Source: Hamiltosporidium tvaerminnensis FI-OER-3-3 (Eukaryota; Fungi; Microsporidia). From it: DNA of 64,000 bases. Within the stretch, counting starts at the first letter, position 1. Each line of letters starts with the position of its first letter. Both the position numbers and the translations under genes were made by a program. The stretch spans positions 496,001-560,000 of the forward strand of contig CM061254.1 in assembly GCA_022605425.2 (NCBI GenBank), given 5' to 3'. Under the pieces are notes generated by a model. The model made no database searches. It was not told the origin of the DNA and saw nothing but the letters and a program-made list of their open reading frames with translations. Of this stretch, positions 16,751 to 48,330 are shown piece by piece.

Positions 16751-16785
16751 TCTTTATTATAAACATTTTTTTTTTCAATTTATCT

Positions 16786-16977
16786 TTATATTTTTTTCTT
16801 TTTTGATGAAAATGTAGAATTCTCTTTATTGCTATTACTTCTTATTCCTTTGAATTCAAATACATTTTTTGTACAAAACCATGATGTAAATGATTCTTCT
16901 ATTTCTACAAATTCTTTTTTAACAGCTTTTTGCATAAATTTTAAACCTCTTAAGTTTTTGCTAAGTTCTGTTGGCAT
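16786..16977 (-). CDS. MPP6: Miniature Mpp6 (M-phase phosphoprotein 6, nuclear exosome cofactor)-like protein, 63 aa
   Basis: N-terminal LSKNLRGLKFMQK matches the conserved Mpp6 LSKNLLRMKFMQR motif. Later W and GIRS resemble the G-R-S motif; basic tail. cccaaattt upstream of the ATG. Confidence 0.7.
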   Translation of the reverse strand: MPTELSKNLRGLKFMQKAVKKEFVEIEESFTSWFCTKNVFEFKGIRSNSNKENSTFSSKKKKI

Positions 16978-20249: not shown

Positions 20250-21545
20250 AAACTTAACTACATCCAGGATGTAAAAAACGTCTATAACTTCCCCGCTAAA
20301 GAACTTGAAAAAAATTTAAATGGTGTTGAACTCAAAAGTAAACATATTATTTTGCAACTTTTGGATTGTTGTAGAAATTTAAAGGTAAATCTACCAGAAG
20401 AGCAGGAATCCCCAAAGGTTGAGAACAATACCAAAACTCATCTTAAACTAACAAAAAAACTTTTTAAAAGTATAATAAGGGTTATAAGAGGAAGTCCAAA
20501 TGAAGAAATTAGAAACAGTTCAACTAGCTAACGTTTATAGCGAAATATAAAACCGAAAACTACATTCAAAGAAATATAATACGTGAAATAACGAGCTGGA
20601 AGGTATAAATGATCCCTCAAACTGGTTAACGAAAGGGAATCTAAGGCCACGTGATAAAGCAGTGATTTTCTATATTCAAGATATAGAAGATGGTGTGTGT
20701 CAACACAGCAGCAAGTCTGGTAAAACTGTAGATCATCTTGCAAATCGATGTGAAAAAAGGCTAGACCATAACTATACTATACGACACAATGAGGTTTTAC
20801 AACGCATAAATTTACTTCTGCTAAATAGATATCATTTTGAGTCATCAAAACAAATTAGGAGCCATTCAGTTCAGAAAATTCTTGATAACGAGTAAGCAGA
20901 GATTAGAGTAGAACCCAGAATAAAAATTGATATCAAGATTCGGTGCAACAAACCTGATATATTTATTTGAGACAAGAGAAAAAATAAGATAGCAATCGTC
21001 GAAGTAGGAATTACTTTCCAAGATTCACTTCAAACACTTATAACAGAGAAACATAGGATTAAGGCCTTTTAGCAAATGAGTTAGGGTTGAGATAATTCCC
21101 TGTGTAGTGCCTTGGGACGGTATTGTGACAAAATATTATAAGATGTGTCTCAAAAAAATTCAAATATTCATTAATGCAGAGGAATGTATAGAATCCATAA
21201 TACTTGAGAAGATTGTCAAAACAATTTCCTTTGATCCACAAGAGGACTTGAGTTGGACTAAATGTCGAAGAAAGTTGGGAAAGATCATAATTGTGCGTTG
21301 AAGAAACCGAGATGCATAGGCAACCAACACTCCCTTTAAAGCAAGTAGACAACGATGCAAATGGTGTGCAACAAGTAAATCTAAAAACATTTCACCCTTT
21401 AGCCTAAATAGCTAAACCACTGCGGAAGAACCTGCAATTAATTCCAATGGTTAGTCGGATTTAAATGATAGAAGTGATTGGTTAAAATAATTAAAAAATT
21501 ATATAAAAGTGTGAAGATTTGTCAGCCCAGAATTTTATTAAATAC
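20250..21545 (+). mobile_element. Old 5'-truncated R4/Dong-like (RLE) non-LTR retrotransposon fragment
   Basis: Degenerate GKTVDHLANRCEK, RHNEV, RSHSVQKILDNE, PWDGIVTKY. Ends in the family terminus cccagaattttattaaata. Confidence 0.85.
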
Positions 21546-21636: not shown

Positions 21637-24600
21637 ATGGGTATAAGAAAATATGTAGGCAGCGAAAAACAAAAAGAAAAAATAATAAAGGCTGCAAACA
21701 GGGCAAGTGAAGTGGATGTGGTAATTAGAGAGTGTAAAAACGACCAGGGAATTCCACAGCCAAGCTCATACACACCATCCACCATCATAAATAACACTTC
21801 TATACCACCAAGCGAAGCAAACACAAACACAAAGGTATGCTTGCTTAACACCATACCCTCGCCATCTAACCCTATGCATTCAAGCACCGTAATCCCCTGG
21901 CCAGATATAGCTGCTAATGGGCCAAACCTTTGTACCATACCTATTTCCGAAAGCCTCGTTGTACTCCGATCCATACTCAGGTCTATAGAGGCCGAGCGTC
22001 AAGAATTTATTCGATGTGTTTTTTTTGCAGTACAAACAAGGTTTGACCGAATGCCTAGAAATGGATGCAAGGGATACAGAGCTACTATAATGAGAAGTTC
22101 TCCTGTACCGAAACTATCGATGTGCTAAAAAGAATGGCACACAATAAGACGGAAGAGGAAATTAGGCAAAAAGAGAATGGAGAGCGACGTCGAATCGCCA
22201 CTTGTCTCGCCGAGCCATGTTCCTTGACCGATGCTACTCGATTTATAAGCCTGAGAGAAAAATACTTGAGTAATATCAAAAAAATATCTGAGGAGGAAAT
22301 CGGAAAAGTAGTAGTCCGAACTCGAAAGCTTCCAAATGAATTGGTTGACACTACAGTTCTTGATCTTATTAATCGAATAGTCGGTGAATATGCTGACTAT
22401 CATGTACCTATGACGATAACAGACATTGCCCGAATTATCCAGACAGCCCAGGTATGTTATGACGATGAAACACGTAAAGAGAGGCCAAGATCAGCGTGGA
22501 AAGAAAGCTTTGAGAGTAAAATTTCAGTGTTAAAACTTTCAAAAGATATCCTCGAGAATGCAAGTAGACGGGAAGAACTCTCCTCTTCTCAAACTAAAAG
22601 TCTTAAAAAAATTATGCGAGAGTTTAATTTAGACCCAAACAAAACAAATGATCTATCGGAGGCTTTAGTTAAGAAGAATGAGCTGATAACTGTTTACGAA
22701 AAAAAACTTACGATGTACGAAAGTAGGAAGCAATTCGAAAAAAGAGAATCGTATGTTTGAGCTGTTCCGAGGTAGATATTATCGTGGCCTGTCTGAGCGT
22801 GTGGAATCCGAGCATGTGGTTAATCGTGACGAAATTGTAAGTTTTTGGTCCACAATGTGAACAAAAATTATGAAATAGTTACGTATGATGAGTATCTGAT
22901 ACCTTCGTGCCAGATACTCACCAGGCCACGTTTACTTCACTTGATGGATTTGTAGATATTATCAATTGGCTTCCTAACTGGAAAGCCGCCGGAATTGATG
23001 GGATCTACAATTTTTATATCAAGAAACTTACGACTCTTCACAAATATCTTTATGATATTGTGAAAGCCATATGTTTTGAAGGAACACCACAGGCTAATTG
23101 GTTTTATCATGGGCTAACGTATCTCATTCCAAAAAGCGTACCACAAAAAGGCTCCGAATATAGGCCAATAACTTGTATGTCAAACCTTTACAAGCTGACG
23201 ACAAAGTGAGTTACAAAAGTTGTTCAGCTTGAGGTGGAGAGGCGAGGGTTACTAGCAGATAATCAATTGGGTGCTGTGAGAGGTGTGCAAGGAGCGAAGG
23301 AGCAGGCCCTGCTAAATGTTGCTCTTAATAAAGAGTATGGAAATAATCTTAAGGCAACATGGATTGATGTTAAAAAAGCTTATGATTCAATAGATCATGC
23401 TTATTTAACTCAATGCATTGAAAACCTTAATTTACCTGATTGGATCCTGAAATTTATTAAGGTAATTATATCAAAATGGAAAATTGATATATCAGTAGGG
23501 CCTGAAAAAATCATGAGCAAGAAGATTGATAGAGGGATTCTACAAGGAGATAGTCTGTCACCTTTGTTATTTGTGCTGTGTATGGATCCATTAAGCCGAA
23601 AGCTTAATGAAAAATACACAAAATTGACAGTACAAACAGATGCGGAATCCCATTCTACTAATCATCTCTTTTTTATTGATGATTTTAAGCTACTTGCAAA
23701 AGACAGCTCCACATTGAATGCTATGACAGGCGAGGCAAAGGAATTTTTAGAGGTGATTGGCTTAGAGATTAACAAAGACAAGTCAGCCACAAATGATACG
23801 TGTTGTGAAGATACTGCCACTCTTCTAGAAGGTGTTAGTGTTTACAAATATTTAGGAATAATAGAAGATAGCAGAGGAATCCCAACACGAGCTCATTTGA
23901 AGAAGTACAGAGCAAACTCATATCAAGAGTTGAAAGACTATGTCACACTAGATTAAATGTAAAAAATTTATTTTCTGCAATCAATCAACATGCGATATCG
24001 TTAATAAACTACCACATAGGAGTACTTCGACTTGAACCGGCTGACTTCTCTAAGTTAGATGATGTAGTGCGTGCGGTGTTGGTGAAGAATAAGATACATC
24101 TCCGCCCATGATGTAAAGAGCGTTTATACCTTCCTAGAACAGAACTTGGAAGAGGCCTACATAGTGTTGAGTTGCGAAGCGAACATATGCTTCTGCAACT
24201 CTTGGATTGTCTGGAAAAAAGAATAGAAATATCTACTAGACGAGTAGCAATCCTAAAAGTGGGGAATAATAATAAAACCCATCTTGCACTAATAAAAGAC
24301 TTTTTACAAGTAAAATACGGGATGGCAGAGGAAGTCACAAAAAAGAAATTGGAAGAAGCTCAACTAGCTAACCTATATAACGAAATCAAAAACCGAAAAC
24401 TACATTCAAAGTTATATAGCGCTAGAAATAACGAGCTGGTAAGTGTAAATGACTCCTCAAGATGGATAAAGAAAGGAAGTGTAAGACCACGTGATGAAGC
24501 AGTGTTCTGTTATATCCAGGATAGAAATGTATTCTGGGGTGCAGAAGGTATGTGTCAACACTGCAACCAGTCTAGGAAAACTGTTGATCACTTAGCAACG

Positions 24601-25432
24601 AGATGTGAAAAAATGCTTGGTCATGACTATACTAGACGACATAATGAAGTAGTACGATGTATACATTTACTCTTCCTGAATAAATATAAGTTTAAGTCTT
24701 CGAAACGAATTAGAAGCCACTCAGTTCAAGAAATTCTTGATAACGAATATGCAGAGATAAGAGTGGACACCAGAATAAAAACTGATGTCAAGATCCGGTG
24801 TAACAGACCAGATATATTTATTTTAGACAAGAGACAGAATAGGATAAACCTCATTGAATTAGGAATCACATCCCAAGACTCTCTTCAAATAGTTGAAACA
24901 GAGAAGCTTAGGAAGTATGACCTATTAGCAAATGAGTTAGGTCTTATTTATAAATGCAATGTAGAGATAATTCCTTATGTGATGACCTGGGACGGTATTG
25001 TGACAAAATACCATAAGACGTATGTTAAGAGACTGCAAATACCCATGAATGTAGAGGCATATATACAATCCATAGTACTCAAGAAGACAGTCGAAACAAT
25101 TTCTTTTGATCGACGAAGAGGACTTGAGTCAGGACTAAATGCTGAGGAGAGCTGGGAGAGAGCATCATTAAGTGTTATTTTAGGAGCTGAGATGCATAAA
25201 CAACCAATACCCCCTTTAAAGCAAGTAGACAACGAGGAAGATTATTTTAAAACGGAAAATACAAAAAATATTTACTCCTTATTTTGGATGGTATAACCGC
25301 AGCAAAGGAACCAACAACTAATACAAATGAAGAATTGGAGTTGGAGGAAGAAATAGAAGTGGTTGAAATGGTGGAAAGAATTATTTAAAAAGAAAAATTT
25401 GTTAACCCAGAATTTTATTAAATAAAAAAAAA
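21637..25432 (+). mobile_element. Full-length, disabled R4/Dong-like non-LTR retrotransposon (RT + CCHC + restriction-like endonuclease), copy 1
   Basis: ORF pieces 21637-25296: KAAGIDGI, YRPITC, WIDVKKAYDS, GILQGDSLSPLLF, FIDD, YKYLG, CQHC...HLATRC, RHNEV, RPDI, IELG, K..KY. 3' taacccagaattttattaaataaaaaaaa. Several stops and frameshifts. Confidence 0.95.
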
Positions 25433-25527
25433 TTAGGTTTCGCAAATCCCATTTTTTTCTATATTCATTTATATACCTCATTGGTTTTCCTTTAGCATAT
25501 TATTTAGGATCATTAAAACCCCCTTAT

Positions 25528-27195
25528 ATGTTAGAACAGAAACCATTACAACAAACTTTAATAGATCTTTATAAAAGATCTTTGAACAATTCAATTCAAT
25601 TTATTACAAAAATAGGATTCTCAACTCCAATAACAATTTCTTATACAGATAAAGAAATATATTGTAAATCATTATTTGAAGTAAAAGAATACAGAAAACT
25701 TTATGGTTTTTTATTGTGTATAGAAAGTAAAAAATATCCAGAAGAAATAATATTTTGTAATTGTTGTACTCCAATATACAACTATTATAGAAACATATCT
25801 TTATATAAAGATAGAGAGAGACAAGGTTTGAAATCATTTATTGTTCATAATACACCACCACCTACAGATTCTTACCTTCTTTATATACATGCCCTATGTA
25901 CATATAAACAGAAACATAAAGAAAAAATTTTATGTCGTTGTATTAATATAAATCCATATTTCTGGGACCCCTACTTACTTCTTTTATATAGTGATATATC
26001 TTTATTGGAAATACCACTCACCCCAATATTTCATATATTTGTACTGTATTCCTATACACATTCTATCAACCCTTCTAACCTACTTAAAAATTCTATAAAG
26101 TTTCTTATAAATTCTCTTCAACCTATTCTATCAATAAATCCATCACAAGAAAATAATAATTTTGATATAAACACATCAGAGATAAATTTTAATTTTAATG
26201 AAATGAAATATTTAGAAGAAAATTCATTAGAAATAATTGATAATAATAAAATATATTCTAATGAAGAAATGATTAATTATAATAAAGAAACAAATTATAA
26301 TAAAACGTATTCCAATGAAAAACTAGAAAAATCTAATGAATCGATTAATATAAATAACTATAATACTATTCCATTTAAAATAGCACTTCTTGCAGCCACT
26401 TTCTATTATTTAAAAGAATTTGATAAAAGTATTCTTCTATTTAATTTTATACAAAATAATTTTCCTTTAAATTTGGATTTTTACGATCTTTTTTCTAATA
26501 TTTTATATATAAAAAATGATATAAAACAACTAGCAAGTCTCACAACAAAATGTGTAGAATTAAATCCAGAAAGACCTGAAACAATGTGTGTTATAGCTAA
26601 CTATTACTCATTAAAAGGTAACCATGAAAATGCTATAGAATATTTTAAAAAGGCTATTACTTTTTCACCTACTTTTACTTCTGTTTATACCCTGATTGGA
26701 CACGAATATATGGAATTAAAAGAATATAATATGGCTATTTACAGTTACAATAAAGCATTAAAATATAATAAAACTGATTATAGAGCATGGTATGGATTAG
26801 GAAAAGTATATTTATCACTTTCTTTAAAAGAATATTCTTCATATTTTTATATAAAAGCTTCTGAATTAAAACCAGATGATTCTTATATATGGTTATGTCT
26901 TGGACAGGTAAAATTACTTTGTAATTCTATTGAAGAATCTGTTTCTTGTTTTTTAAAAGCTACCACCTTAGGGGATATTGATGGGTATTTAATGATAGCT
27001 GATCTTTATAAAAACGAAAAAAGATATTATGAAGCAGTAATTTATTATGAAAAATATGTTGATGAGTGTAAAGAAAGGAAAGAGGATATTTATAAGATTT
27101 GTGTGTTTCTATGTGAGTACTATAATGAAATAGGAAATATAAAGAAAGTAGAATTTTATACAAAAATGATGGAAGAATATGAAGGAAGATCTTAA
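25528..27195 (+). CDS. CDC23: Anaphase-promoting complex subunit 8 (Cdc23), TPR protein, copy 1 (555 aa)
   Basis: NPYFWD, DLFSNILY, RPETMCVIANYYSL..HENAIEYFKKA, TLIGHEYMELK, DYRAWYGLG. CCCCC upstream of the ATG. Confidence 0.93.
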   Translation: MLEQKPLQQTLIDLYKRSLNNSIQFITKIGFSTPITISYTDKEIYCKSLFEVKEYRKLYGFLLCIESKKYPEEIIFCNCCTPIYNYYRNISLYKDRERQGLKSFIVHNTPPPTDSYLLYIHALCTYKQKHKEKILCRCININPYFWDPYLLLLYSDISLLEIPLTPIFHIFVLYSYTHSINPSNLLKNSIKFLINSLQPILSINPSQENNNFDINTSEINFNFNEMKYLEENSLEIIDNNKIYSNEEMINYNKETNYNKTYSNEKLEKSNESININNYNTIPFKIALLAATFYYLKEFDKSILLFNFIQNNFPLNLDFYDLFSNILYIKNDIKQLASLTTKCVELNPERPETMCVIANYYSLKGNHENAIEYFKKAITFSPTFTSVYTLIGHEYMELKEYNMAIYSYNKALKYNKTDYRAWYGLGKVYLSLSLKEYSSYFYIKASELKPDDSYIWLCLGQVKLLCNSIEESVSCFLKATTLGDIDGYLMIADLYKNEKRYYEAVIYYEKYVDECKERKEDIYKICVFLCEYYNEIGNIKKVEFYTKMMEEYEGRS

Positions 27196-27369
27196 GAAAA
27201 GAATGTATAAAAAGAGTTATTAAGCCAAGAATAATGTAATTAAAGAATCGTATAAATTTTTAATGTAATAATAGCTATGTATATTATAAGAGGGTATTTT
27301 TGTACAATTATTAAGAATAAATTTTTTATAATTTTTGTATTTTTTTTATTCTATCATTAGTTTCATTTT

Positions 27370-28050
27370 ATAGAGAGAATAGCCTCGTTAAAAACGATCT
27401 GCTTGTCAATGGTTGTGTAGAATCGGTGTTAAATTGTTTTTTGACCATTAAAAGGAATGAAAACCGCAATAAATTTTCGGTTGTTGGGCTGGAATTTGAT
27501 ATGAAAGAGAAAATATACAAAACAGTTAACTTATTCCTGTAAAGATATTGGTTTTGTTTTTAAGGAACTGGATTAGGAACAACGGCTGAACTAATAGATA
27601 ATTGTCATATAAATACAAGAAAACATAGCCTTTCTCACTCGGGTTAAAATATTATCCCAATAGGAAATACGGAAAAAACTTCTTAATAGAAAACCATGAA
27701 TATTAATTAGCTGGTTATAAATGTTATTTGAAACATGAAATCGTTTCGTAAATCCTATTATTTTGCCTGGAAATATCTTAACTACAAGTCTATTTAATTC
27801 AGTTTGCATAGCTTAATTAGATGCTGCCAGTCCTCGAGAATATTAAGATATGTTTCAAAGTCTAACATACATTATTAACGGATTATAACCGACTAAGTAA
27901 CTGCCTCTCTTATTTAATGCATTCTAAATATCTTTTATGAAAAGCTTTGAGATGTAGGTATCTTTGAAGATAGCGCTGGTTTTTTAGTAAGCAGTTATTA
28001 AAGTTAAACTTAGAACAATTCAATTTTACGAAAACAGAATTTTTTATGTC
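27370..28050 (+). repeat. Dispersed repeat copy C
   Basis: aaaaacgatctgcttg.caatg, ctcactcgggtta, gagatgtaggtatc, ttaaacttagaac. Confidence 0.7.
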
Positions 28051-28089
28051 CCAGTTTTGCATCTGTGTTTATTTAAAATAGAAAATTTT

Positions 28090-29460
28090 CATTTTTTTAA
28101 AATTCTAGTTTAACAGATTTATCATCTTTGAAATGATTTCTTCTGCCCTGAACCCTCTCAATTTATTCTTCTAAAACCGACTCTTTATTTACATTAATTG
28201 TTGGCTTCTTCACGGTGGTACCGTTTTGTAAAATAAGTGCTATTTTTTTTATATTTTATGTTTTAACACCATATTTCTCAGTATTCAGTCGATTTTATAG
28301 ATTGTTCGATTTTTGTGCATCTCAGCTATTTTAATAACATCTATAGACGCTCTTTTCCACTCCATTCGGACTGTGGTCTTGAACCAAGTTCTCTTCGTCT
28401 ATCAAAGTAATTGTTTAGATTGTTTTTTTAAGTACTATGAATAGTATATATGTCTCTATTTATGGATATTTGAAGTTTCTTAAGACACATCTTATGGTAT
28501 TTTGTAACAATACCGTCACCGGGCACTACAGAGGAAATTATCTCAATATTGCATTTATAAATAAGACCTAACTCTCTTGCTAATAGGTTATACTTCCTAA
28601 GCTTCTCTGTTTTAACTATTTGAAGAGAGTATTGGGATGTGATTTCTCCTACAATGAGGATTATTCTGTTCTGTCTCTTGTCCCAAATAAATATAGCTGG
28701 CCTTTTCACCGAATATTGACATTGTTTTTATTCGAGCCTAACACTCATCTCTGTATACTCATTATATAGAATTTCTCAGACAAAGTTACACCTAATTCGT
28801 TTTAAGGCTTAAAATGAATTCTAGATAGTAGGAGTAAGTGTATGCATCGTACCCCTTTATTGTGTCATCTACTATAGTCATGACCAAGTATTTTTTCCCA
28901 TCTTGTTGCTAAGTGGTCCATTTTTTCCTAGACAGGTTGCAGCGATGACACATACTTTCTGCATCCCAGAATACATTTCAATCCTGAATATAACAGAAAA
29001 AAGTTCCATCACGTGGCTTAATATTCCCCTTCTTCAACCTTCATGAAAAGTCACTAACACCTACAAGCTCGTTATTCTAGCATTACATTTCTTTAAATGT
29101 TGTTTTAGGTTTTTGATTTTGTTAGATAGATTAGCTAGTTGAGATTCTTCCAAATTCTTTCTTTGCGACTTCTTCTTTCTACCTGTATTTTATTTTTGAA
29201 AAGTATTTTATTAGTGAAAGATGATTCTGTTATTGTGGCTCAACCTTTAGGCTCGTTGCTCTTCTGGTTGATGTATCTTTATATTTTTCCAGACTATTCA
29301 GAAGGGGCAAAAGCATATGTTAGCTATGCAACTCAAAACTACGAACGCCTCTTCCAAGTTCTGTTTTAAAAAGGTGTAAACGCTCTTTGCATCTTAGTGA
29401 AGATGTATCCTATTCGTTACCAAAACCGAAAGAACTGCGTCATAACTTTGCAAAGTCCGG
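28090..29460 (-). mobile_element. Old 5'-truncated R4/Dong-like fragment
   Basis: RPAIFIWDKRQNRI...SLQIVKTEKLRKYNLLARELG, remnants of the CCHC region and RLYLP, degenerate terminus near 28095. Confidence 0.85.
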
Positions 29461-36546: not shown

Positions 36547-39500
36547 ATGAGTACAATGAAGAGAAGAATTGTAATTAAAAAAATAAAATTAAACAAAATA
36601 GGTTTATTTTCTTATATACGAAGATATAAATTTGTAATGTGTATAAGTGATAAGAGTAACTCATTTAGTATTTCTCTAAGTGTTAAAGATGGTTGAGTTG
36701 GGTATGTTTTTATAAGTTCAGATGAAACAATAAGAGTAAGAATTTTTATGGACGAAATACTTTTAAATGAATTTTATTTTGAAGTTAAAAATGGAAATGG
36801 AATTATAGAAATAGAAAATTCGTATTTTAAAGGATGTATGGAGTATTTGTGTGTGGATTCTTTATTTTCTTATTTGGAATTTAAAGATGAATATAAATTG
36901 GAAAATACAGTTGATAATGAATTGAAGAATAAAATTGATAATGAATTTGAATATAAATTAAAAAATAAAGTTGATAATGAATTGAAGAATGAATTTAACA
37001 ATAAAGGTGACAATAAAATTGACAATAAAGTTGATAATGAATTTGACAATAAAATTGATAATGAAATTAAATTTGTTGAAGAAATTAAATATTATAAAAA
37101 TAATTTTTGTGCATTTAAAGTTTATGATGGTCGTATTTATTATTTAGATTATTCTGATTTAAGAATATCTTGGAACAAAATAGAAAACAGATTTAAAAAC
37201 GAATTACCGTGTAGATGGGAAAAGAAGGAAAACAAAGATGGAAATATTTTTTATATAAATCATAATAATTGTACAACCACATGGAAACATCCAATTACAT
37301 CTTATAGAATGGTTAGAATTGTACAGAAAATGGAAAAATATATTTTTTATTCTAAATTACGGGATTTTTTATATCCTTTTAATTCACAAATCATTTCTTT
37401 ATCAGTTAAAAGAAATTTTTATGTTCAATCAACGGCACTCAAACTCATAGAAAGTACACAAGCAGATCTTTTAAAAAATATTTTTATAGAATTTATAGAT
37501 GAAATAGGAGAAGACCATGGTGCTTTACTTAGAGAATACTTTTATGAAACATCATTATAAATTGCACAAGATTATAGAATTCAAGATGTTGGTAGTTTTT
37601 ATGATGTAAAACCCATGACTGAACAGTATTTTAAAGACGTGGAATATTTAATTCCTGAAAATTTAATATTTTTTATTTAATAAAATTCTGGGTTAAAATA
37701 TTTTTTACCATTTTTACATGTTTTCTTCTACCTCTTTAACCACTTTTGTCTCTTCCTCCAAATCCGACTCTTCATTTATGTTATTGGTCGGTTCCTCTAA
37801 AGTGGTTCCTCCTTGTAAAATAAAGGGGGCTTTATATTTTGGTTTAAAATTTTTGGCACCATCTTCCTCTGTTTTCGCTTTTTTTAAAGGGGGTATTGGT
37901 TCCTCATGCATCTCTGATCTCATAATAACACCCATTGACGCTCTCTCCCAGCTCTCTTCGGCATTTAGTCCTGACTCAAGTCCTCTTCGTCGATCAAAGG
38001 AAATAGTTTCGACTGTCTTTTTAAGTACTATAGACTGAATGTATGCTTCTACATTCATGGGTATTTCTAGTCTTTTAAGATGAGATTTATGGTATTTTGT
38101 CACAATACCGTCCCAGGTCATCACATAAGGGATTATCTCAACACTACACTTATAAATAAGGCCCAACTCATTGGCTAGCAGGTCATACTTACTAAGTTTT
38201 TCAGTTTCAACTATTTGAAGTGAATCTTGGGAAGTGATTCCTACTTCAATTAGTGTTATCTTATTCTTCTTCTTATCTAAAATAAATATTTCGGGTCTGT
38301 TATTCCGAATTTTAACATCAGTTTTTATTCTGGTGTCCACTCTTATCTCTGCATACTCATTATCAAGAATTTCTTGAACTGAGTGGCTCCTTATTCGTTT
38401 TGAAGACTTAAACTTATATCTATTTAGAAGGAGAAGGTGTAGGCATCTAACCACTTCATTATGCCGTCTAGTGTAATCATGGCCTAGCATTTTTTCACAT
38501 CTAGTTGCTAGATGATCCACAGTCTTACCAGACTTCCCGCAATGTTGACACACACCATCTGCTCCCCAGAATACATTTCTATCCTGGATATAGCAGAACA
38601 CAGCTTCATTTCGTGGCCTAATATTTCCTCTCTTTAGCCATCTTGAAGAGTCACTAACACTCACAAGCTCATTTTTCCTTGCATTATATAACTTTGAATG
38701 GAGTTTTCGTTTTTCTATTTCGTTATATAGTTTTGCAAGTTGAGCTTCTTCTAAACTTTTTTAGTGACTTCTTCTACCAACCTGTACTTTACTTTTAAGA
38801 AGCCTTTTATTAGTGCAAGATGGGTTTTATTATTATTCTCCACCTTGAGGATTGCAGCTCGTCTAGTTGATATTTCTTTACTTTTTTCCAGACAATCCAA
38901 GAGTTGCAGAAGCATATGTTCGCTTCGCAACTCAACACTATGTAGGCCTCTTCCAAGTTCTGTTCTAGGAAGGTATAAACGCTCTTTACATCCTAGGCGG
39001 AGATGTATCTTATTCTTAACGACACCGCACGCACTGCATCATCTAACTTAGAGAAGTCAGCTGGTTCAAGTCGAAGTACTCCTATATGATAGTTTAGTAA
39101 AGAAATTTAATGTTGGTTAATGGCTTGAAATAAATTTTTTGCGTTTAATCTAGTGTGACAAAGTCTTTCAACTCTTGATATAAGTTTGCTTTGTACTTCT
39201 TCAAATAAGCTACGTGTTGGAATTCCTCTGCTATCTTCTATTATTCCTAAATATTTGTAAACACTAACACCTTCTAGAAGAGTTGCAGTATCTTCACAAC
39301 ACGTATCATTTGTGGCTGACTTCTCTTTGTTTAATCTCTAACCCAATCACCTCTAAAAATTCCTTTGCCTCGTCTGTCATAGCACTCAATGTCGAACTGT
39401 CTTTAGCAAGGAGCTTAAGATCATCAATAAACAAGATATGATTAGTAGAATGGGATTCTGCATCTGTTTGTACTGTCACTTTTGTGTTTTTTTCATTAAG

Positions 39501-42500
39501 CTTTCGGCTTAATGGATCCATACACAACACAAATAACAAAGGTGACAGACTTTCTCCTTGTAGAATCCCTCTATCAATCTTCTTGCTCATGATTTTTTCA
39601 GGCCCTACTGATATATCAATTTTCCATTTTGATATAATTACCTTAATAAATTTCAGGATCCAATCAGGTAAATTAAGGTTTTCAATGCATTGAGTTAAAT
39701 AAGCATGATCTATTGAATCATAAGCTTTTTTAACATCAATCCATGTTGCCTTAAGATTATTTCCATACTCTTTATTTAAGGCAATATTCAGTAGAGCCTG
39801 CTCTTTCGCTCCCTGCACACCTCTTACTGCTCCCAACTGGTTCTCCGCAAGCAACCCTCACATTTCCACTTCAATTTGAACGACTTTCGTTACACACTTA
39901 GTCGTTAAATTGTAGAGGTTGGACATAAAAGTGATTGGCCTGTAGTCAGAGCCTCTTCGTGGAATTCTTTTCGGTATCAAATACGTAAGCCCGCAGTAAA
40001 ACTAATCAGCTTGAGTTGTTCCTTCTAAACATATAACTTTCACAATATCATAAAGATATTTGTGTAGAGTTGTAAGTTTCTTAATGAAAAAATTGTAAAT
40101 ACCATCAATTCCAGCAGCTTTCCAATTGGGAAGCCAATTAATGATATTTACAAATTCATCAAGTGAAGGAAACGTGGTCGGATGATTATCTGATACAAAT
40201 GGAATCAAATAATCATCATACGTGACTGTGTCATCATTTTTGTTCCACATTGTAGACCAAAAACTCACAATTTCATCACGGCTAACCACATGCTCGGATT
40301 CTACACGCTCAGATAACCCACGATAAAATCGACCTCGGAAAAGCTCAAACATACGATTCTTTTTTCGGAATTGCTTCCTACTTTCATGCATCGTAATTTT
40401 TTTCTCGTAAACATTCAAAGACTCATTCTTCTTAACTAAAGCCTCAGAAAGATCAGTTACGCTGCTCAAGTTTAAATTAAACTCTCGCATGATTTTCTTA
40501 AGGCTCTTCGTTTCCGAAGTGGAGAGCTTTTCCTGCTTACGAGCCTTCTCGAGAAGATCTTTGGAAAGTACTAACTTAGAAATTTTACTTTCTATGTTTT
40601 TTTTCCAAGCGGATCTAGGCTTTTCTTTGCGTGTTGCCTCGTCATAGCATACCTGCGCAGCTTGCATGATATACGCGGCTTCCGTAATTGACTCAGGTAC
40701 ATGAGCTCCTGCATATTCACTGACTACTCGATTAATGAGATCCAGAACTTTACTATCAACCAATTCATTTGGATGTTTTCTAGTTCGGACCACCACTTTT
40801 CCAATTTCGTTCTCAGAGATTTCTTTGATTTTACTCAAGAATTTATCTCTCAGGTTTATGTACTCCGTGGTGTCGGTCAAGGTGCATGTATCAGCGAGAC
40901 AAGTGGCGATTCTACGTCGCTCTCCATTCTCTTCTGATTTTACATCCTTTCCCATCTCACTTTGTGCCAATTTTTTTAACACTTCGAGAGTTTCAGTGCA
41001 GCCGAATTTCTCATTATAGTACCTGTGAAGCTCTGTCCAGCCATTTCTTGGCATTCTTTCAAACCTTGTCTGTACTGCAAAAAAAACAATTCGAGGCCAT
41101 TCCTTCGGGTCGGCTGTTACGGAATCGAATATCGTCCGCAATGCCATTAGCCTGTTACCTTCTGGAATAGCTAGAGTACAGGGGCTTGTCATGTCGTACG
41201 ATGGCTCGCACGCAGAGACTTCAACCGAAGAGGGAACTGGTGCATTAGGCGAAGGTAAGGTGTCAAGCCCACTATTTTGCATTTTACTGCATGTTTGGCT
41301 TGGTGGTGGAGGTGTTATTGTTGTGTAGGAGGAGGAAGGTAGGGGAATCGCCGGTGGATGTAGCTTACATTTTTGTATCTCACTATCACTCTTTTTCACC
41401 TCATCAGCGTCGTTTGCAGCCTTTATTTTGGTATTATTCGATATTTCGCTGCTAACATTTTTCTTTCTACCCATCTGAAAATTTAAAAAAATATATTAAA
41501 ATTAAAAATAAACCAAAAAATAAATTCTTTTTAAAGTCTGAAATAAATGAATATAAGGGAGAAAATAAAGCTGAAGATTTGAAAAATAAAATAGAAAATA
41601 ATTATTTAGAAAATTCCGATAAATATACATGTGAAGATAAAGATGAAATAAAATATTTAGAAAATAATTTTCAAAGTCAAAAATATCATTCTTCTAACGA
41701 AATATAAGAAAAAGTAAAAAATAATTTAGAAGATGAATTCTTTAAAAATCAAAAAAAATAAGCAAAAAAATTTTTTAAACGATGAAGCTTTTTTTACTTT
41801 TATAGGAATATTTCTAGCTCTTGCCATTGAAAATAAACAATGTATTGCAATTAATTTTAGTTTAGCTTTTTATGAAAATCTATTGAACAGAAAATATAAT
41901 TTAAGACATATACAAGATATGCACATACAATCTTCTATGAAATAGCTTTTAATGAACAAATATGATATTTATGAGGATAAATATGACGACGAGGATAATA
42001 ATTCCATTAGATATAAAAATTTGAATTGTAACAATAAAAATGTGAAATTTAAGAATATAAATGATTACGAGGAAGATTCTAAAGATATTTTTGATGAAAA
42101 TTACAAAAATAATTATCAAGAAATTAATTATCAAAATAAAAATGTAAAAGATGAAAGAAAAAAATACGTGCAAAGCTTAATTAATGAAAGACTTTTTGAA
42201 TCCAAAAAATTGCCATACAATTACATTAGGAAAGCTTTTTTTTCAATTATAAGTTATGAATTTAAAGAAATATTTTCTTGCTCAAATATTTCACAAATAT
42301 TGGTTGAAATTTATGTTTTATTTGATAATTGTTCTTTAAATTCGAAAGAAATTTTTTTTTATTTGAAATTATAGAAAACAAAAATGAAATTTATCTTAGA
42401 AAATTTATTTCTTTTATTACAGGATCAGGCACAATTCCTTTTGGTTCCATTATTTTAGGACAAATAAATATTTATATTGAAAAAACCAATGGAGTAAATT

Positions 42501-42622
42501 TATTATTTCGAGCAGTATCATGTTCTAATAGGTTATTTTTAAGTAGCTATGATAGTAAAAATAAAATGGAAGAAATATTAGACTTTTCATTGTTTAACAC
42601 TGAAGGATTTCATAAAGTTTAA
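36547..42622 (+). pseudogene. Rsp5/Nedd4-like WW-HECT E3 ligase pseudogene, split by a retrotransposon
   Basis: ATG 36547, in-frame TGA, WW domain (LPCRWEKK...FYINHNNCTTTWKHP), HECT start (EFIDEIGEDHGALLREYF), FISFITGS, AVSCSNRLFL, TEGF. Frame continues across the excised element (PENL|KKY). Additional stops (37558, ~41705, 41943 TAG for W) and frameshifts. Confidence 0.88.
37667..41474 (-). mobile_element. Full-length R4/Dong-like retrotransposon, copy 2 (3808 bp), with 12-bp TSD
   Basis: TSD ctgaaaatttaa at 37655-37666 and 41475-41486. ORF pieces 40002-41474, 39306-39854 (RT) and 37714-38664 (CCHC + RLE). A few disabling mutations. Confidence 0.97.
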
Positions 42623-42645
42623 ATAAAGTATAGATTCCTCAATCA

Positions 42646-42687
42646 AAAAATGGTAAAAATATTTTAACCCAGAATTTTATTAAATAA
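42646..42687 (+). mobile_element. 42-bp extremely 5'-truncated R4-like insertion with 16-bp TSD
   Basis: aaaaatggtaaaaatattttaacccagaattttattaaataa matches the 3' end of copy 2. Flanked by atagattcctcaatca at 42630-42645 and 42688-42703. Confidence 0.92.
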
Positions 42688-43297
42688 ATAGATTCCTCAA
42701 TCAGTATTTTAAGAATTTTAAAATGAAAGATTGTAGATGAAATTCATGTTTATGACTTCTATACCGATATGAAAATAAACTCTTTATAAATAATAATATG
42801 AAATAAAAGTTCAAAAAGTTTAATAACTGCCTTTTTGTAAAAGAATAAAGTTGTTGTCTTTTTAATTATAAAATGTAGTTTAAAAAAGGTTTAAATTATA
42901 ATAAAATGTGAGAAGAAATATTACAATAATTGATAAGAATTGCTTTTGGTAAATAAATTTCCAAAACAATCAGATTTCATCAAATTTTAAATGAAATTAC
43001 AAATAATAAAAAATTTAACTTAAATTAAGAAAAAAATGCTCCAAATATTTATTTTATTACAAATATAGAATAATTAGCTTATTATTATATATTGTTTTAA
43101 AATATTTCAGTTCTTAAAATAAAAAAATGTGAGATATAAATAAAAATGTTAAACTTAATTTTAAACAATTTATTTCAAATAAAGAAATGCAAATAAAAAA
43201 TAAACAGCCTCCATAAAGAAATATTTAATTCTTATAAAGAAAGTAAAAAAATATTAAATCTGAATAAGGAAAGTAAAAAAATATTTTTTTATAGAAA

Positions 43298-43851: not shown

Positions 43852-43939
43852 AATAATTTTGTAAAATACTATTTAAATAATAAATTTAAAAAACATTAAA
43901 ATGAACATTTTATGATTAAGCGAGATATAATTACATAAA

Positions 43940-46900
43940 TTTTATCAATTAAAATGATGGGTTAAACCCATTTTTACACCTTTATGCATTTTCTTCTACC
44001 TTTCTAGCACCGTCTTTTCTTCTCCTAAATCAGATTCTTCATTTATGCCTTTGTGAATTCCTCTAATGGGGTTCCTCCTTTTGAAATAAGGGGTTGTTCA
44101 TTTTTTGTTTTAACATGTTTAACATGATCTTCCTCATTCTTCGCTTGTTTTAAAGGGGGTGTTGGTTCCAGGTACATCTCGGCTTTCTCAATAACACAAT
44201 TGGCGCTTTTCCCCAGCTCTCTTCGGCATTTGGCTCAATGTCCAGTGCTCTTATTCGGTCAAAGGAAATTGTATAGAGTGTCTTCTTAAGTACTATAGAC
44301 TGAATGTATGCTTCTACATTCATGGGTATTTCTAGTCATTTAAGATGAGATTTATGGTATTTTGTCACAATACCGTCCCAGGTCATCACATAAGGGATTA
44401 TCCCAACACTACACCTATAAATAAGACCCAACTCATTGGCTAGCAGGTCATACTTCCTAAGTTTTTTAGTTTTAACTTTTGAAGTGAATCTTGGGAAGTG
44501 ATTCCTACTTCAATGAGTGTTATCTTATTCTTCTTCTTATCTAAAATAAATATTTCGGATCTGTTATTCCGAATTTTAACATCAGTTTTTATTCTGGTGT
44601 CCACTCTTATCTCTGCATACTCATTATCAAGAATTTCTTGAACTGAGTGACTTCTAATTCGTTTTGAGGACTTAAACTTATATATATTTAAGAGAAGTTG
44701 GTGTAGGCATCTAACCACTTCATTATGCCGTCTGGTATAGTCATGGCCTAGCATTTTTTCTTATCTAGTTGCTAGATGATCCACAGTCTTACCAGACTTC
44801 CCGCAATGTTGACACACACCATCTGCTCCCCAGAATACATTTCTATCCTGGATATAGCAGAACACAGCTTCATTTCGTGGCCTAATATTTCCTCTCTTTA
44901 GCCATCTTGAAGAGTCACTAACACTCACAAGCTCATTTTTCCTTGCATTATATAACTTTGAATGGAGTTTTCGTTTTTCTATTTCGTTATATAGTTTTGC
45001 AAGTTGAGCTTCTTCTAAACTTTTCTTAGTGACTTCTTCTAACAACCTGTACTTTACTTTTAAGAAGCTTTTTATTAGTGCAAGATAGGATTTATTATTA
45101 TTCTCCACCTTGAGGATTGCTGCTCGTCTAGTTGATATTTCTTTACTTTTTTCGAGACAATCTAAGAGTTCCAGAAGCATATGTTCGCTTCGCAACTCAA
45201 CACTATGTAGGCCTCTTCCAAGTTCTGTTCTAGGAAGGTATAAACGCTCTTTACATTCTGGGCGGAGATTTATCTTATTCTTCACCAACACCGCACCGCA
45301 CTGTATCATCTAACTTAGAGAAGTCAGCCGGTTATGACGAAGTACTCCTATATGATAGTTGATTAACGATATCGCATGTTGATTGATTGCAGAAAATATA
45401 TTTTTTGGGTTTAATCTAGTGTGACAAAGTCTTTCAACTATTGAAATATGAGTTTGCTCTGTACTTCTTACAATGAGCTACGTGTGAAATTCCTCTGCTA
45501 TTTTCTATCTTTCTTTAATTTTTGTCTAAACTAATACCTTCTAGAAGAATAGCAGTTTTTTCATAATACGTATCATTTGTGGCCGACTTCTCTACGTTAA
45601 TCTTTAAGCCAATCACCTTTAAAAATTCCTTTGCCTTGTCTGTCATAGCACTCAATGTGGAGCTGTATTTTGCAAGGAGCTTCAGATCATCAAAAAACAA
45701 GAGATGATTAGTAGAATGAGATTCTGCATCTGTTTGTACTGTCACTTTTGTGTATTTTTCATTAAGCTTTCGGCTTAATGGATCCATACACAACACAAAT
45801 AACAATGGTGACAAACTATCTCTTTGCAGAATCCCTCTCTCAATCTTCTTGCTCATGATTTTTTCAGGCCCTACTGATATATCAATTTTCCATTTTGATA
45901 TAATTACCTTAATAAATTTCAAGATCCAATCAGGTAAATTAAGGTTTTCAATGTATTGAGTTAAATAAGCATGATCTATTGAATCATAAGCTTTTTTAAC
46001 ATCAATCCATGTTGCCTTAAGATTGTTTCCGTACTCTTTATTTAGGGCAATATTCGGTAGAGCCTGCTCTTTCGCTCCCTGCACACCTCTAACTGCTCCC
46101 AACTGGTTCTCAGCAAGCAACCTTCGCCTTTCCACTTCAAGATCAACGACTTTCGTTACACACTTTGTCGTTAACTTGTAGAGGCTGGATATACAATGAT
46201 TGGCCTGTAGTCAGAGCCTCTTTGCAGAATTCATTTCTGTATCAAATACGAGAGCCCGCAATAAAACCAATCAGCTTGAGTTGTTCCTTCTAAACATATA
46301 ACTTTCACAATATCATAAAGATATTTGTGTAAAGTTGTAAGTTTCTTAATGAAAAAATTGTAAATGCCATCAATTCCAGCAGATTTCCAATTGGGAAGCC
46401 AACTAATAAATCTACAAACTCTTTAATTGATGGAACGAGTCCTGATCAGTATCTGGGTCGGATTTTGATGAAGGCCAGGGGGAAAATAAAAATTTTTTAG
46501 GGTTCAAATTTTTTTTATTAAAATCACTTTTTTGTCAATTTACAATAAAAAAATTAAAAATTACAAAAAATATACAACCTAATAAATTTTTAGATTTCGC
46601 AGTAAATTTCACTTAAAGGCAATTAAATTTTCTGTTTATGTGATACTTATCAACAGTGGGGAACTTTTATCAAAATCTAAAAAAATCAAATATAAAACAA
46701 CAATGATGTAGAGAAGCATTTTTATCAGAACAACACGATTTGGTTAAATCATGTTTTGTTTGTGATAGAACTCTACACGGCTTAATTTTTCTCTAGAAGA
46801 ATTCGTTTCCGCTGTACATTTTGCGATAAGAAATATACTGAATATTGCTTCGGGGCAATTACAAATTCTAAAATTGGAATTCATAGTGTAATTTATATGA

Positions 46901-48330
46901 GTTGAAGGTATACCTTTGGATTTACATAGAATGACACCAAAGCAAAGCATGGTTTTTCAGATGAACTATAGGAGACACTTTTAAAGCCCAGAGATTGTTA
47001 GTACAAAATGATTGCTTGTATTCTTTTAAGAAAAATGGTTGACCCGAAGAAATATTGGAAATAAATTAAAAGTTATAAGCAAGGGAAAGTATAATAGAGA
47101 TCGTCTCATTCGCTAGCAATGGGGTTTCGATGCTATTTTGAAGGCGATAAAGAGGGTCTATATGCAAATTGTTCGTAATAGAAGGTTCGGTGGTTTAAAT
47201 TAATGCTGTAAACAATGCTTTCTTTCCAATAAGTACAGTATATTCATATGAAAACCGTCCATACAAATCAAAATTAAGAGAGAATCAAGATTTATCTTAT
47301 AATAATGGGAATCATTCAACACATATTGTATCAGAATTGGGGTTTTATACAAACATAATCGAAAAGTTATGGTTGAGATTGTTAGGTTTAAAAAAAATAA
47401 TTTTTAAAAAAGGCTTAAGTTAAATAATTACATATGAGAATTTTTTTAGGGAGAATCATCGATTTAAGACACTAAGTAGACGGTTTTTAAAACTAATGGA
47501 ATTTTTTATTGAATAAAGAGGATATTATTTTACATGATTTTATCAAAGAAAATTAAACTTACAAAAAAGGGGTAAAAATAATTCGGTTTTTACGCCTAAA
47601 AAATTTTAAATTTTCCTCTGGCCTTTATCGAAACTTCAACCAGTATCTGACACGAAAGGTAACAATTACTCATCATGCGTAAATTTATCTTTATTTTTGT
47701 TTCACATTGTAGACCAAAAACTTAAAATTTAATCATAATTGATCACATGCTCAGATTCCACACATTCGGATAAACCTCGATAATATCTAACTCGGAACAG
47801 TTAAATACTGACAGTTATCTCTCAAAATTTCTTCCTACTTCCGTACATTGTAAGATTCTTCTCATGACCATTCAGAGACTTATTCTTCTAAAGCAAAACC
47901 TCAGAAAGATCATTTGTATGGCTAAATTCTAACTAAACACTCGAAAAATTTCTCTGCGACTTTTTTTTTGAGGGAAGAGAGTTTTTCCTGTCTATGCGCT
48001 TCTTTGAGAATATATTTTGCAAGTTTTAACACGGAGATTTAAGTCTCAATGTTTTCTTTCCACATTGATCTTGGTCTTTTTTTGCTTGTTTCTTCGTCCT
48101 AACATGCCTGCAACGCATGGAAAATCCGTGTTAAGTCAGTTATAGTCATCGGCAAAGGAGATTCAGAATGCTTGGTAATATTTTGATTAATGGGGTTCAA
48201 AAGTTTACTGTTACCAATTCACTTAGAAGCTTTCGAGTTCGGACTAGTAGATCTCCAATTTCCTTCTCCATGTGTTTTTTGACTTTACACAAGTTCCTCT
48301 CTTTCAGGTTAATCAGATTTGATAATTATG
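43940..48330 (-). mobile_element. R4/Dong-like retrotransposon copy 3, 5'-truncated, interrupted by Merlin
   Basis: RT 45515-46135 and CCHC/RLE 44440-45309. Homology resumes after 47649 up to ~48330. Degenerate 3' terminus near 43940-43965. Confidence 0.92.
46456..47641 (+). mobile_element. Merlin (IS1016/IS1595-like) DNA transposon, decayed
   Basis: 8-bp TSD agtatctg (46448-46455 / 47642-47649). GG-starting imperfect ~45-bp TIRs (aaggccag.ggaaaat..aaattttttagg). Transposase relics: two CxxC, KGKYNRDR..QWGFDAI, NHS, TNIIEKLW. Confidence 0.9.

What the first reader, a model, noticed from the sequence alone, without database searches (positions are those of the whole stretch)
37655..41486. Leaderless non-LTR retrotransposon: the element begins exactly at its ATG
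Seen: the 12-bp TSD abuts the initiator ATG (41474) with no intervening base, and excision restores the host HECT frame. Copy 1 also begins ATGGGTA at 21637, with unrelated AT-rich sequence upstream. Known: RLE-type elements normally have a 5' UTR with a promoter or ribozyme, and microsporidian mRNAs have very short leaders. Inference: this family dropped its 5' UTR and uses a promoter inside the ORF or borrows flanking signals; here the target supplies ttAAATTTtcag right before the ATG. This would be an unusual adaptation of a retroelement to host transcription.
Basis: partly seen in the sequence, partly recalled or inferred. Interest (0 to 1): 0.8.

Follow-up and report, generated by a model that had tools for sequence, protein, structure and literature searches.

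The report
Retrotransposon that starts at its ATG
A young, abundant jumping gene of the Daphnia parasite Hamiltosporidium has no leader sequence of its own: every copy begins at its start codon, and in a few daughter copies a short piece of a parent copy's neighbouring DNA sits in front of that codon, which suggests that its RNA starts a few bases upstream, in whatever DNA it landed in.

Summary
The window copy (37667-41474, minus strand) is a dead 3.8-kb member of a single-ORF, R2-type-endonuclease non-LTR family of Hamiltosporidium tvaerminnensis. At least 149 copies keep the 5' end. In 52 of 52 distinct flanks examined, similarity starts exactly at ATGGGTAG. Intact copies are 99% coding: a 1253-codon ORF from base 1 and a 3' UTR of about 38 nt. 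Two other subfamilies in this genome also begin at the ATG, and so do three lineages from other organisms (41-53% protein identity), so the trait belongs to the whole clade.

The mRNA is probably not strictly leaderless. Only 4-5 of 18 duplications abut the ATG; the rest have 1-13 extra bases. Two extras equal the 5' flank of another copy, and in one of these pairs the elements are identical over 3790 nt. A third pair, in an older subfamily, shares 16 nt. I read these as small 5' transductions: RNA starts 0-16 nt upstream, in flanking DNA. Three other extras have no source copy in this assembly.

Flanks are very AT-rich and depleted in the host-type CCC/GGG signal, so capture of that signal is not general. 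No ribozyme was found. No RNA data were usable, so the promoter (internal or flank-supplied) remains inferred. The scan noted this UTR-less family before on another piece of this genome (s1-605134).

The parts
41475..41486 (-). 5' copy of the 12-bp target-site duplication (ttaaattttcag on the minus strand), directly abutting the ATG
37667..41474 (-). the retrotransposon copy (3800 nt to the conserved ...TTATTAAAT end plus an 8-nt A-rich tail). It is a dead copy, about 2% from its relatives, with 3 indels and many stops
41472..41474 (-). start codon ATG, which is the first three bases of the sequence shared by all copies
41415..41474 (-). first 60 nt of the ORF (MGRKKNVSSE...KIKAAN): an island of 67-83% nucleotide identity between three subfamilies, followed by about 330 nt at 25-60%. 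Candidate internal signal or conserved basic N-terminus
40002..41474 (-). first open stretch of the broken ORF (490 codons) in this copy. Intact relatives read 1253 codons from the same ATG
39306..39854 (-). reverse-transcriptase piece (Pfam RVT_1, E 4e-20). In an intact copy RVT_1 covers residues 504-743
37714..38664 (-). C-terminal piece with a CCHC zinc knuckle and an R2-type restriction-like endonuclease (RHN...PD...E...K), then an acidic tail and the stop at 37714-37716
37675..37713 (-). 39-nt 3' UTR ending ...TTAACCCAGAATTTTATTAAAT. The terminal 22-mer occurs 744 times in the genome
37667..37674 (-). short A-rich tail (aaaaaata)
37655..37666 (-). 3' copy of the 12-bp target-site duplication
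36748..37666 (+). left part of the interrupted host WW-HECT gene (WW domain at residues 153-182; in-frame stop at 37558-37560). The element lies antisense to it
41487..42622 (+). right part of the host WW-HECT gene, in several frames (HECT profile positions 25-84, 128-187, 218-304), so a decayed gene
21637..25432 (+). 'copy 1': a member of a second subfamily (about 85% identity from element position 393 on; 5' 390 nt diverged apart from the first 60 nt). It also begins at ATGGGTA and is degenerate

Best explanation
This is a compact, single-ORF non-LTR retrotransposon with an R2-type C-terminal endonuclease. Its transmissible unit begins at the A of its own start codon. It has zero 5' UTR, a 1253-codon ORF, a 3' UTR of about 38 nt and a short A-rich tail. 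It inserts by target-primed reverse transcription into very AT-rich, non-specific sites and makes 11-16-bp duplications.

Its RNA is made by initiation at or just upstream of the ATG (0 to about 16 nt), inside whatever flanking DNA the copy sits in. The mRNA therefore carries a tiny, copy-specific leader that is not part of the element. That leader is sometimes copied into the daughter, where it appears as extra bases between the duplication and the ATG.

Shown: the 5' boundary at the ATG; intact ORFs; duplications; extra bases; identity of two or three extras with another copy's flank; conservation of the architecture in three subfamilies and three foreign lineages.

Inferred: that the extras mark transcription starts. 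Also inferred: that the start site is positioned by signals inside the element (the conserved first 60 nt, with an invariant GGGT next to the ATG) acting together with the AT-rich DNA that the endonuclease's target choice places upstream.
For: Boundary:
- 149 copies carry the 5' 28-mer.
- 52/52 distinct flanks are unrelated up to the ATG.
- 15 of the 20 fetched copies read 1253 codons from base 1 (translation).

Other subfamilies and lineages:
- The copy-1 subfamily starts at the ATG in 12/18 and 11/15 matches.
- The MGRRKK subfamily does so in 30/40.
- Clusters P0020, P0028 and P0039 (53, 49 and 41% identity) have two, three and three contigs each, with unrelated flanks up to ATGG.

Leaders:
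- Extras of 0-13 nt occur in 18 copies.
- L045 carries aagcaagt between its own 16-bp duplication and the ATG. The same 8 nt are the end of L039's duplicated target.
- L039 and L045 differ at 0 of 3790 positions, while other lineage members differ from L039 by 7-28. Only these two copies in the genome have that junction.
- L036 carries tctattttt, the end of L034's flank, and three copies share it.
- L057 and L058, from an older subfamily and each other's nearest relatives at 1.9%, share 16 nt and then diverge.
- Shared suffixes of 9 nt or more: 3 pairs at the junction, against 3 pairs summed over 10 control offsets.

Other points:
- No transduction is longer than 16 nt in the main family, which argues against distant promoters.
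- Microsporidian leaders are known to be tiny (under 7 nt in E. cuniculi by RACE, PMC2803860).
- Host genes in this window show the AAATTT...CCC signal before the ATG; the element's flanks do not.
- The first 60 nt are a conservation island.
Against: No RNA evidence: the four RNA runs laid gave 0 reads, which is no test.

Three of the longer extras (gttagg, agaatta, tttgatt) have no second copy in this assembly. They may be filler or non-templated additions, as known for R2-type reverse transcriptases, rather than leaders.

Short extras (1-4 nt) are uninformative.

The 9-nt match is within the range seen at control offsets in this low-complexity DNA. The duplication of L034 is ambiguous because its target is a local repeat.

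If initiation were always upstream, leaders should be inherited and shared by many copies. Leader-sharing groups have only 2-3 members.

The conservation of the first 60 nt can equally be explained by a conserved basic N-terminal peptide.
Confidence: 0.6

Rival explanations
1. Truly leaderless mRNA. Transcription starts exactly at the A of the ATG from a promoter wholly inside the ORF. The extra bases at 5' junctions are non-templated or filler additions made during integration.
For: 4-5 of 18 duplications abut the ATG. Three long extras have no source copy. The shared boundary is exact in 52/52 flanks. The architecture is conserved across the clade.
Against: L045's 8-nt extra is identical to the parental flank of L039, and the two elements are identical over 3790 nt. 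The 16-nt leader shared by L057 and L058 is hard to produce without a template.
Confidence: 0.15
2. There is no promoter in the element at all. Expression depends on the flank: the endonuclease's preference for extremely AT-rich DNA puts a TATA-like or AAATTT-like tract upstream of every new copy, and that tract alone drives and positions initiation.
For: The 40 nt upstream have 12.5% GC against 22.5% further out. TATAWA occurs in 27% against 12%, TTTAAA in 37% against 17%, AAATTT in 25% against 12%. GC is 14% upstream of the duplication against 21% downstream. Peyretaillade et al. propose that AT-rich/AAATTT tracts act like TATA boxes in microsporidia (PMC2803860).
Against: No motif sits at a fixed distance. 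The host-type CCC/GGG signal is depleted (4%). Foreign relatives sit in less AT-rich flanks (22-39% GC) yet keep the same architecture. The inferred starts stay within 16 nt of the ATG whatever the flank, which suggests an element-borne positioning signal.
Confidence: 0.2
3. Co-transcription plus self-cleavage. Copies are transcribed by read-through from neighbouring genes, and an HDV-like ribozyme encoded in the first part of the ORF cuts at its own 5' edge, as in R2, RTE and L1Tc. This gives an RNA that begins at the ATG.
For: It would explain an exact boundary that is independent of the flank. HDV-like ribozymes at the extreme 5' end are documented for R2 and L1Tc (PMC3774820, PMC4035085). 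Transcriptional overrun is known in microsporidia (PMC2803860).
Against: No Rfam ribozyme family matches at E of 5 or less on an intact copy. The first 200 nt fold no better than shuffles (z -0.98). Flank-derived leaders of 8-16 nt do not fit cleavage at position +1.
Confidence: 0.07
4. Artefact: a real 5' UTR exists, but the copies sampled are all truncated at the same place, or the real start codon lies further downstream and the first part is untranslated.
For: 5' truncation is common in this family: 744 3' ends against 149 5' ends, and a 44-nt copy at 42646-42689.
Against: Random truncation cannot pile 149 copies on one base. The ORF is open from that base in intact copies. The ATG and the MG-K-K...SE N-terminus are conserved in relatives down to 41% identity, and the frame stays open through the variable region in three subfamilies.
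Confidence: 0.02

Closest known systems
R2 elements (insects, birds, turtles; solved structures 8gh6, 8iby, 9dou, 9nl2)
   Same: Single ORF with a reverse transcriptase followed by a CCHC knuckle and a PD-(D/E)xK restriction-like endonuclease. The modelled C-terminal 261 residues match R2 chains at Foldseek E 3e-8 to 8e-6, TM about 0.6, and the RT matches at E 3e-13. It uses target-primed reverse transcription and shows variable 5' junctions.
   Different: R2 is specific for one 28S rDNA site. It has a 5' UTR with an HDV-like ribozyme and is co-transcribed with rRNA (PMC3774820). This family inserts at many AT-rich sites, has no 5' UTR and shows no detectable ribozyme. No N-terminal zinc-finger or Myb Pfam match was found.
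Other endonuclease-bearing early-branching non-LTR clades (R4/Dong/Rex6, Hero, NeSL, CRE/SLACS). This entry is from my own knowledge and was not tested here
   Same: Same domain order. Dong, Rex6 and Hero are not strictly site-specific. CRE/SLACS elements have no promoter of their own, and their transcripts start in the interrupted spliced-leader gene, so they carry target-derived 5' bases. That is functionally like the flank-derived leaders inferred here.
   Different: CRE/SLACS borrow one defined promoter by site-specific insertion, whereas here the flanks are all different. Clade assignment by RT phylogeny could not be done because no reference sequences were available in the tools. Earlier notes of this scan call the family 'R4', which is unverified.
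Drosophila jockey / I / F-type internal RNA polymerase II promoters, and L1Tc Pr77
   Same: These elements carry the promoter downstream of the start site, so a full-length copy keeps it after retrotransposition (summarised in PMC2861651). L1Tc has its promoter and ribozyme in the first 77 nt (PMC4035085). The conserved first 60 nt here would play that role.
   Different: Those signals lie in a non-coding 5' UTR and start transcription at element base +1. Here the candidate signal would lie inside the coding sequence, and initiation appears to fall outside the element.
LINE-1 5' transduction (established knowledge)
   Same: Flanking DNA upstream of a source copy is carried to the daughter and lies between the daughter's duplication and the element's 5' end. 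This allows parent-daughter assignment, as for L039 to L045.
   Different: L1 5' transductions arise from occasional upstream promoters and are tens to thousands of nt long. Here they are at most 16 nt, and they may reflect the normal start site.
Giardia GilM/GilT (Arkhipova and Morrison 2001; recalled from memory, paper not held)
   Same: Non-LTR elements in another protist whose mRNAs have leaders of a few nt. As I recall, they have a very short 5' UTR.
   Different: They are telomeric head-to-tail arrays in which the upstream copy's long 3' UTR may supply the promoter. The family here is dispersed, with unrelated flanks and a 38-nt 3' UTR. This is a lead only, not checked.

Membership tests
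non-LTR (LINE-type) retrotransposon | reverse transcriptase of the non-LTR type | tested here: met
   Pfam RVT_1 E 1.3e-27 at residues 504-743. phmmer hits to LINE-1 ORF2p (4e-18) and R2 proteins (3e-13).
non-LTR (LINE-type) retrotransposon | hallmarks of target-primed reverse transcription: target-site duplications, A-rich 3' tail, 5'-truncated copies, no LTRs | tested here: met
   Duplications of 8-18 bp (mostly 11-16) in 18 of 19 copies with both ends. Tails of 1-8 nt. A 44-nt 3'-end-only copy with a 14-bp duplication. 744 3' ends against 149 5' ends.
restriction-like-endonuclease (R2-type) group of non-LTR elements | C-terminal CCHC motif followed by a PD-(D/E)xK nuclease (RHN...PD...E...K) | tested here: met
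   Invariant C47, C50, H59, C64, R75, H76, P132, D133, D138, E161, K164 in 18 relatives. Model pLDDT 82.7. Best PDB matches are seven R2 chains, E 2.6e-8 to 7.5e-6.
restriction-like-endonuclease (R2-type) group of non-LTR elements | no apurinic/apyrimidinic-type endonuclease domain; single ORF | tested here: met
   Only RVT_1 passes in Pfam, with no Exo_endo_phos. One 1253-codon ORF fills 3762 of 3800 nt.
R2 proper | insertion at one specific 28S rDNA site | tested here: not met
   52 different AT-rich flanks, one of them inside a HECT gene.
R2 proper | 5' UTR carrying an HDV-like self-cleaving ribozyme | tested here: not met
   No 5' UTR exists. No ribozyme family matches at E of 5 or less. 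The 5' 200 nt fold at z -0.98. Covariance models can miss divergent ribozymes.
R4/Dong clade | placement within the clade in an RT phylogeny with reference elements | not tested
   No reference R4/Dong/Hero/NeSL sequences were reachable. The word search returned only unnamed relatives and 'reverse transcriptase' of Hamiltosporidium.
leaderless mRNA | the RNA 5' end is the A of the AUG | not testable with these tools
   No RNA run contained the organism. DNA junctions give mixed signals: 4-5 of 18 have no extra base, and 2-3 carry templated flank-derived leaders.
5' transduction (as defined for LINE-1) | sequence between the daughter's duplication and the element's 5' end is identical to the 5' flank of another copy, which is the daughter's closest relative | tested here: met
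   L039 to L045: 8 nt, elements identical, unique pair in the genome. L034/L036/C6:149940: 9 nt. L057/L058: 16 nt. Not met for three other extras.

The most novel reading that the evidence does not exclude
The core promoter of this whole retrotransposon clade lies entirely inside its coding sequence (the conserved first 60 nt or so, with the invariant GGGT beside the ATG). It makes RNA polymerase II start outside the element, a few bases into arbitrary flanking DNA. The element thus needs no non-coding 5' sequence at all, and each of the roughly 150 copies is a natural reporter of how a microsporidian start site is positioned from downstream.
Probability: 0.35. Interest if true: 0.75.

Novelty: new variant of a known kind. 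Interest (0 to 1): 0.62.

Why it matters
Non-LTR retrotransposons must carry their transcription signals with them. The known solutions are an internal promoter in a 5' UTR, a ribozyme that trims a co-transcript, or site-specific insertion behind a host promoter.

This clade shows a fourth layout: no 5' non-coding sequence at all, conserved down to 41% protein identity. DNA-level traces suggest that the RNA begins in the neighbouring DNA.

The papers I could search describe Hamiltosporidium LINEs only as repeat classes (PMC4202319, PMC7313128, PMC12449221), not their anatomy.

Practically, about 150 near-identical copies behind 150 different upstream sequences form a natural promoter-trap series. 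In a phylum without genetic tools and with poorly understood core promoters, one 5'-end-resolved RNA data set from infected Daphnia would show what positions a microsporidian start site. It would also show whether downstream (coding) sequence suffices.

The tiny transductions also allow parent-daughter tracing of recent insertions between parasite strains.

Tried and rejected
RNA evidence. The look-up of sequencing runs found only four DNA holders from one study, plus RNA runs that carry a species label of another organism. Laying four of these from four studies gave 0 reads on 4.2 kb, which is no test.

More copies. I did not try to extract flanks another way. The later pattern searches were specific junction queries only. 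The duplication table therefore rests on 19 copies and the flank set on 52 of 149.

Ribozyme idea. No Rfam match and no significant fold.

Captured host signal. The CCC/GGG and AAATTT counts do not support it as a general mechanism.

Source copies. None found for the extras gttagg, agaatta and tttgatt.

Upstream extensions in other subfamilies. These reach 6-43 nt for copy 1 and 10-28 nt for MGRRKK. In the copy-1 set three of the four extended matches are only 79-83% identical overall, so they may be chance in low-complexity DNA or old shared leaders. Three of the MGRRKK cases are one 14-kb tandem duplication. I left them unresolved.

Host gene. The excised, joined sequence was only checked for open frames inside a script and was not sent to any search tool. 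Its pieces were searched separately by reference.

Script consensus. A column-majority string was computed inside a script only to count differences. It was not printed or saved, and no copy is proposed for any use.

Literature. No paper in the held library describes this anatomy. The Giardia GilM/GilT paper is not held. Two searches failed on syntax.

The large representative protein search was not used.

Full report
WHAT IS AT THE COORDINATES

On the minus strand of 37655-41486 lies one copy of a non-LTR retrotransposon. It is bounded by a perfect 12-bp duplication, ttaaattttcag, at 41486-41475 and 37666-37655. The upstream duplication copy touches the ATG at 41474.

At the other end the ORF stops at 37716-37714. 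A 39-nt 3' UTR follows, ending ...TTAACCCAGAATTTTATTAAAT at 37675, and then an 8-nt A-rich tail.

This copy is dead. It differs at 74 positions from the column majority of 21 aligned copies, has 3 indels, and its first stop is at codon 490.

It sits antisense inside a WW-HECT ubiquitin-ligase gene on the + strand:
- WW domain, E 5.5e-8.
- HECT pieces, E 2.4e-7, 6.6e-3 and 1.5e-12.

Removing the element and one duplication copy gives a 108-codon open frame across the junction. The host gene is itself decayed, however. It has a stop at 37558-37560, and its HECT pieces lie in different frames. The joined sequence was examined only in a script; its pieces were searched separately by reference.

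THE FAMILY

The genome is 21.6 Mb in 17 contigs and AT-rich. Protein hits name it Hamiltosporidium tvaerminnensis.

The first 28 nt of the element occur 149 times with at most 2 mismatches, against 0 for the reversed control. The last 22 nt occur 744 times.

Of 20 full-length loci fetched, 15 have one uninterrupted ORF of 1253 codons that starts at base 1 of the shared sequence. The element is therefore about 99% coding.

The protein has the following features:
- An RVT_1 domain.
- RT similarity to LINE-1 ORF2p and R2.
- No AP-endonuclease domain.
- A C-terminal CCHC plus RHN...PD...E...K module that is invariant in 18 relatives. A model of this module (pLDDT 82.7) matches seven R2 chains best (E 2.6e-8 to 7.5e-6, TM about 0.6).

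So this is an endonuclease-bearing (R2-type) element. It is not R2 itself, because it is not site-specific. I could not place it in a named clade.

WHERE THE ELEMENT BEGINS

In 52 distinct 5' flanks, similarity begins at the A of ATGGGTAG. Upstream positions show only base composition; position -1 is A 46% / T 44%.

The same holds elsewhere:
- Copy-1 subfamily (window 21637): 12 of 18 and 11 of 15 matches start within 1-2 nt of the ATG. A paralogue of its flank stops matching at 21638.
- A third, older subfamily (MGRRKK...; locus L084): 30 of 40 matches start within 3 nt of the ATG.
- Three related lineages from other, unidentified organisms. Clusters P0020 (53% identity, 2 contigs), P0028 (49%, 3 contigs) and P0039 (41%, 3 contigs) all have unrelated flanks right up to ATGGGT or ATGGAGGGT. 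Their flanks have 22-39% GC, so the sharp boundary is not an artefact of AT-rich DNA.

The N-terminus MG-(K/R)-K...SE recurs in these relatives. Between the three Hamiltosporidium subfamilies the first 60 nt are 67-83% identical and the next 330 nt or so only 25-60%, while the frame stays open. The ATG is thus the real, conserved start, and the absence of a 5' UTR is an old trait of the clade.

IS THE RNA LEADERLESS?

The duplications say: not strictly. In 18 copies with both ends, duplications are 8-18 bp, mostly 11-16. The number of extra bases between the duplication and the ATG is 0,0,0,0,1,1,2,4,4,4,6,6,7,8,8,9,9,13. L034 is ambiguous because its target is a local repeat; read by eye, it has none.

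Three sets of extras are templated:
- L045 has aagcaagt between its own 16-bp duplication and the ATG. In L039 the same bases are the end of the 13-bp duplicated target, present on both sides of the element. L039 and L045 are identical at all 3790 compared positions, whereas other members of that lineage differ from L039 by 7-28. No other copy has this junction.
- L036 has tctattttt, which ends the flank of L034. A third copy, at C6:149940, shares it.
- L057 and L058 belong to an older subfamily and are each other's nearest relatives at 1.9%. They share 16 nt before the ATG and then diverge.

Shared suffixes of 9 nt or more were found in three pairs at the junction, against three pairs in total over ten control offsets.

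I read these as small 5' transductions: the parental RNA began 8-16 nt upstream, in flanking DNA.

Against generalising this, three other extras (gttagg, agaatta, tttgatt) have no second copy in the assembly. They may be filler. Leader-sharing groups are also small.

No flank similarity longer than 16 nt was seen in the main family. This argues against distant promoters and against random read-through.

WHAT POSITIONS THE START?

Host genes in the window show the microsporidian AAATTT...CCC arrangement just before the ATG (13980, 25528 and 59672). This matches what Peyretaillade et al. described, together with leaders under 7 nt in E. cuniculi (PMC2803860).

The element's flanks do not show it:

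| Feature | 40 nt upstream | -100..-61 |
|---|---|---|
| CCC or GGG | 4% | 21% |
| AAATTT | 25% | 12% |
| GC content | 12.5% | 22.5% |

The base just 5' of the duplication is T in 14 of 18 copies. GC is 14% upstream of the duplication against 21% downstream.

Capture of a host-type CCC signal is therefore not the rule, and the AAATTT of the window copy is incidental. Two sources remain and cannot be separated without RNA or reporter data:
- An element-borne signal in the conserved first 60 nt. An invariant GGGT lies beside the ATG in all seven lineages aligned.
- The AT-rich tract that target choice places upstream.

A ribozyme at the 5' end, as in R2 or L1Tc (PMC3774820, PMC4035085), finds no support. 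It also does not fit the templated leaders.

LIMITS

No RNA run contained the parasite. The junction statistics therefore rest on 18-19 copies, and the flank set on 52 of 149.

VERDICT

'Leaderless' should be replaced by 'tiny, flank-derived leaders, at least in some source transcripts'. Borrowing of AAATTT/CCC is not general.

This is a new variant of a known kind of element. It is of moderate to good interest, because it offers a natural series of one coding sequence behind about 150 different upstream sequences.

Noticed in passing
window 42646-42689 (+), duplications at 42632-42645 and 42690-42703: A 44-nt copy consisting only of the 3' UTR end and tail of the same family, with a perfect 14-bp target-site duplication (agattcctcaatca). 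It lies about 10 nt after the stop of the HECT gene. This is an extreme 5' truncation.
   Followed up: partly
window 2171-2564: A tandem array of five 67-nt units whose unit resembles the last 55 nt or so of the element (82-84% to element positions 3759-3814). It is either a satellite derived from the 3' end or repeated abortive insertions.
   Followed up: no
window 20266-21544 (+) and 28075-29457 (-): Two 5'-truncated copies (3' 1.3-1.4 kb) of more distant families (72-73% identity). The first ends 92 nt before the ATG of copy 1.
   Followed up: no
window 43929-46455 and 47644-48313 (-): A third large copy: 90% identical in its 3' 2.5 kb and 69% in an upstream piece, with about 1.2 kb of unrelated sequence between the two pieces. 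It is full of stops.
   Followed up: no
genome-wide and loci L081, L083, L085-L090: The 3'-terminal 22-mer occurs 744 times against 149 main-family 5' ends. A similar short 3' UTR motif (AACCC...TTAAAT + A) recurs in relatives from other organisms, which suggests a conserved recognition site for the reverse transcriptase. Earlier notes of the scan propose SINE-like partners of about 730 nt that share it.
   Followed up: no
window 25433-27725 and 59142-61452: A 98% identical inverted duplication of about 2.3 kb carrying a 555-561-codon ORF. Its start is preceded by a host-type signal (...aaaaccccttat|ATG).
   Followed up: no
G000 C4:483711, 497786, 511861: Three copies of the MGRRKK subfamily with identical scores, spaced exactly 14,075 nt apart on one strand. 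This looks like a tandem segmental triplication that includes the element and at least 28 nt of its flank.
   Followed up: no
loci L031-L050: The main family splits into at least two young lineages. One has eight of the sampled copies 0-2 differences apart over 3.8 kb. The other has copies 5-28 apart. This indicates very recent bursts.
   Followed up: partly
window 16451-16786: A long array with an 8-nt period (28 overlapping 120-nt matches).
   Followed up: no
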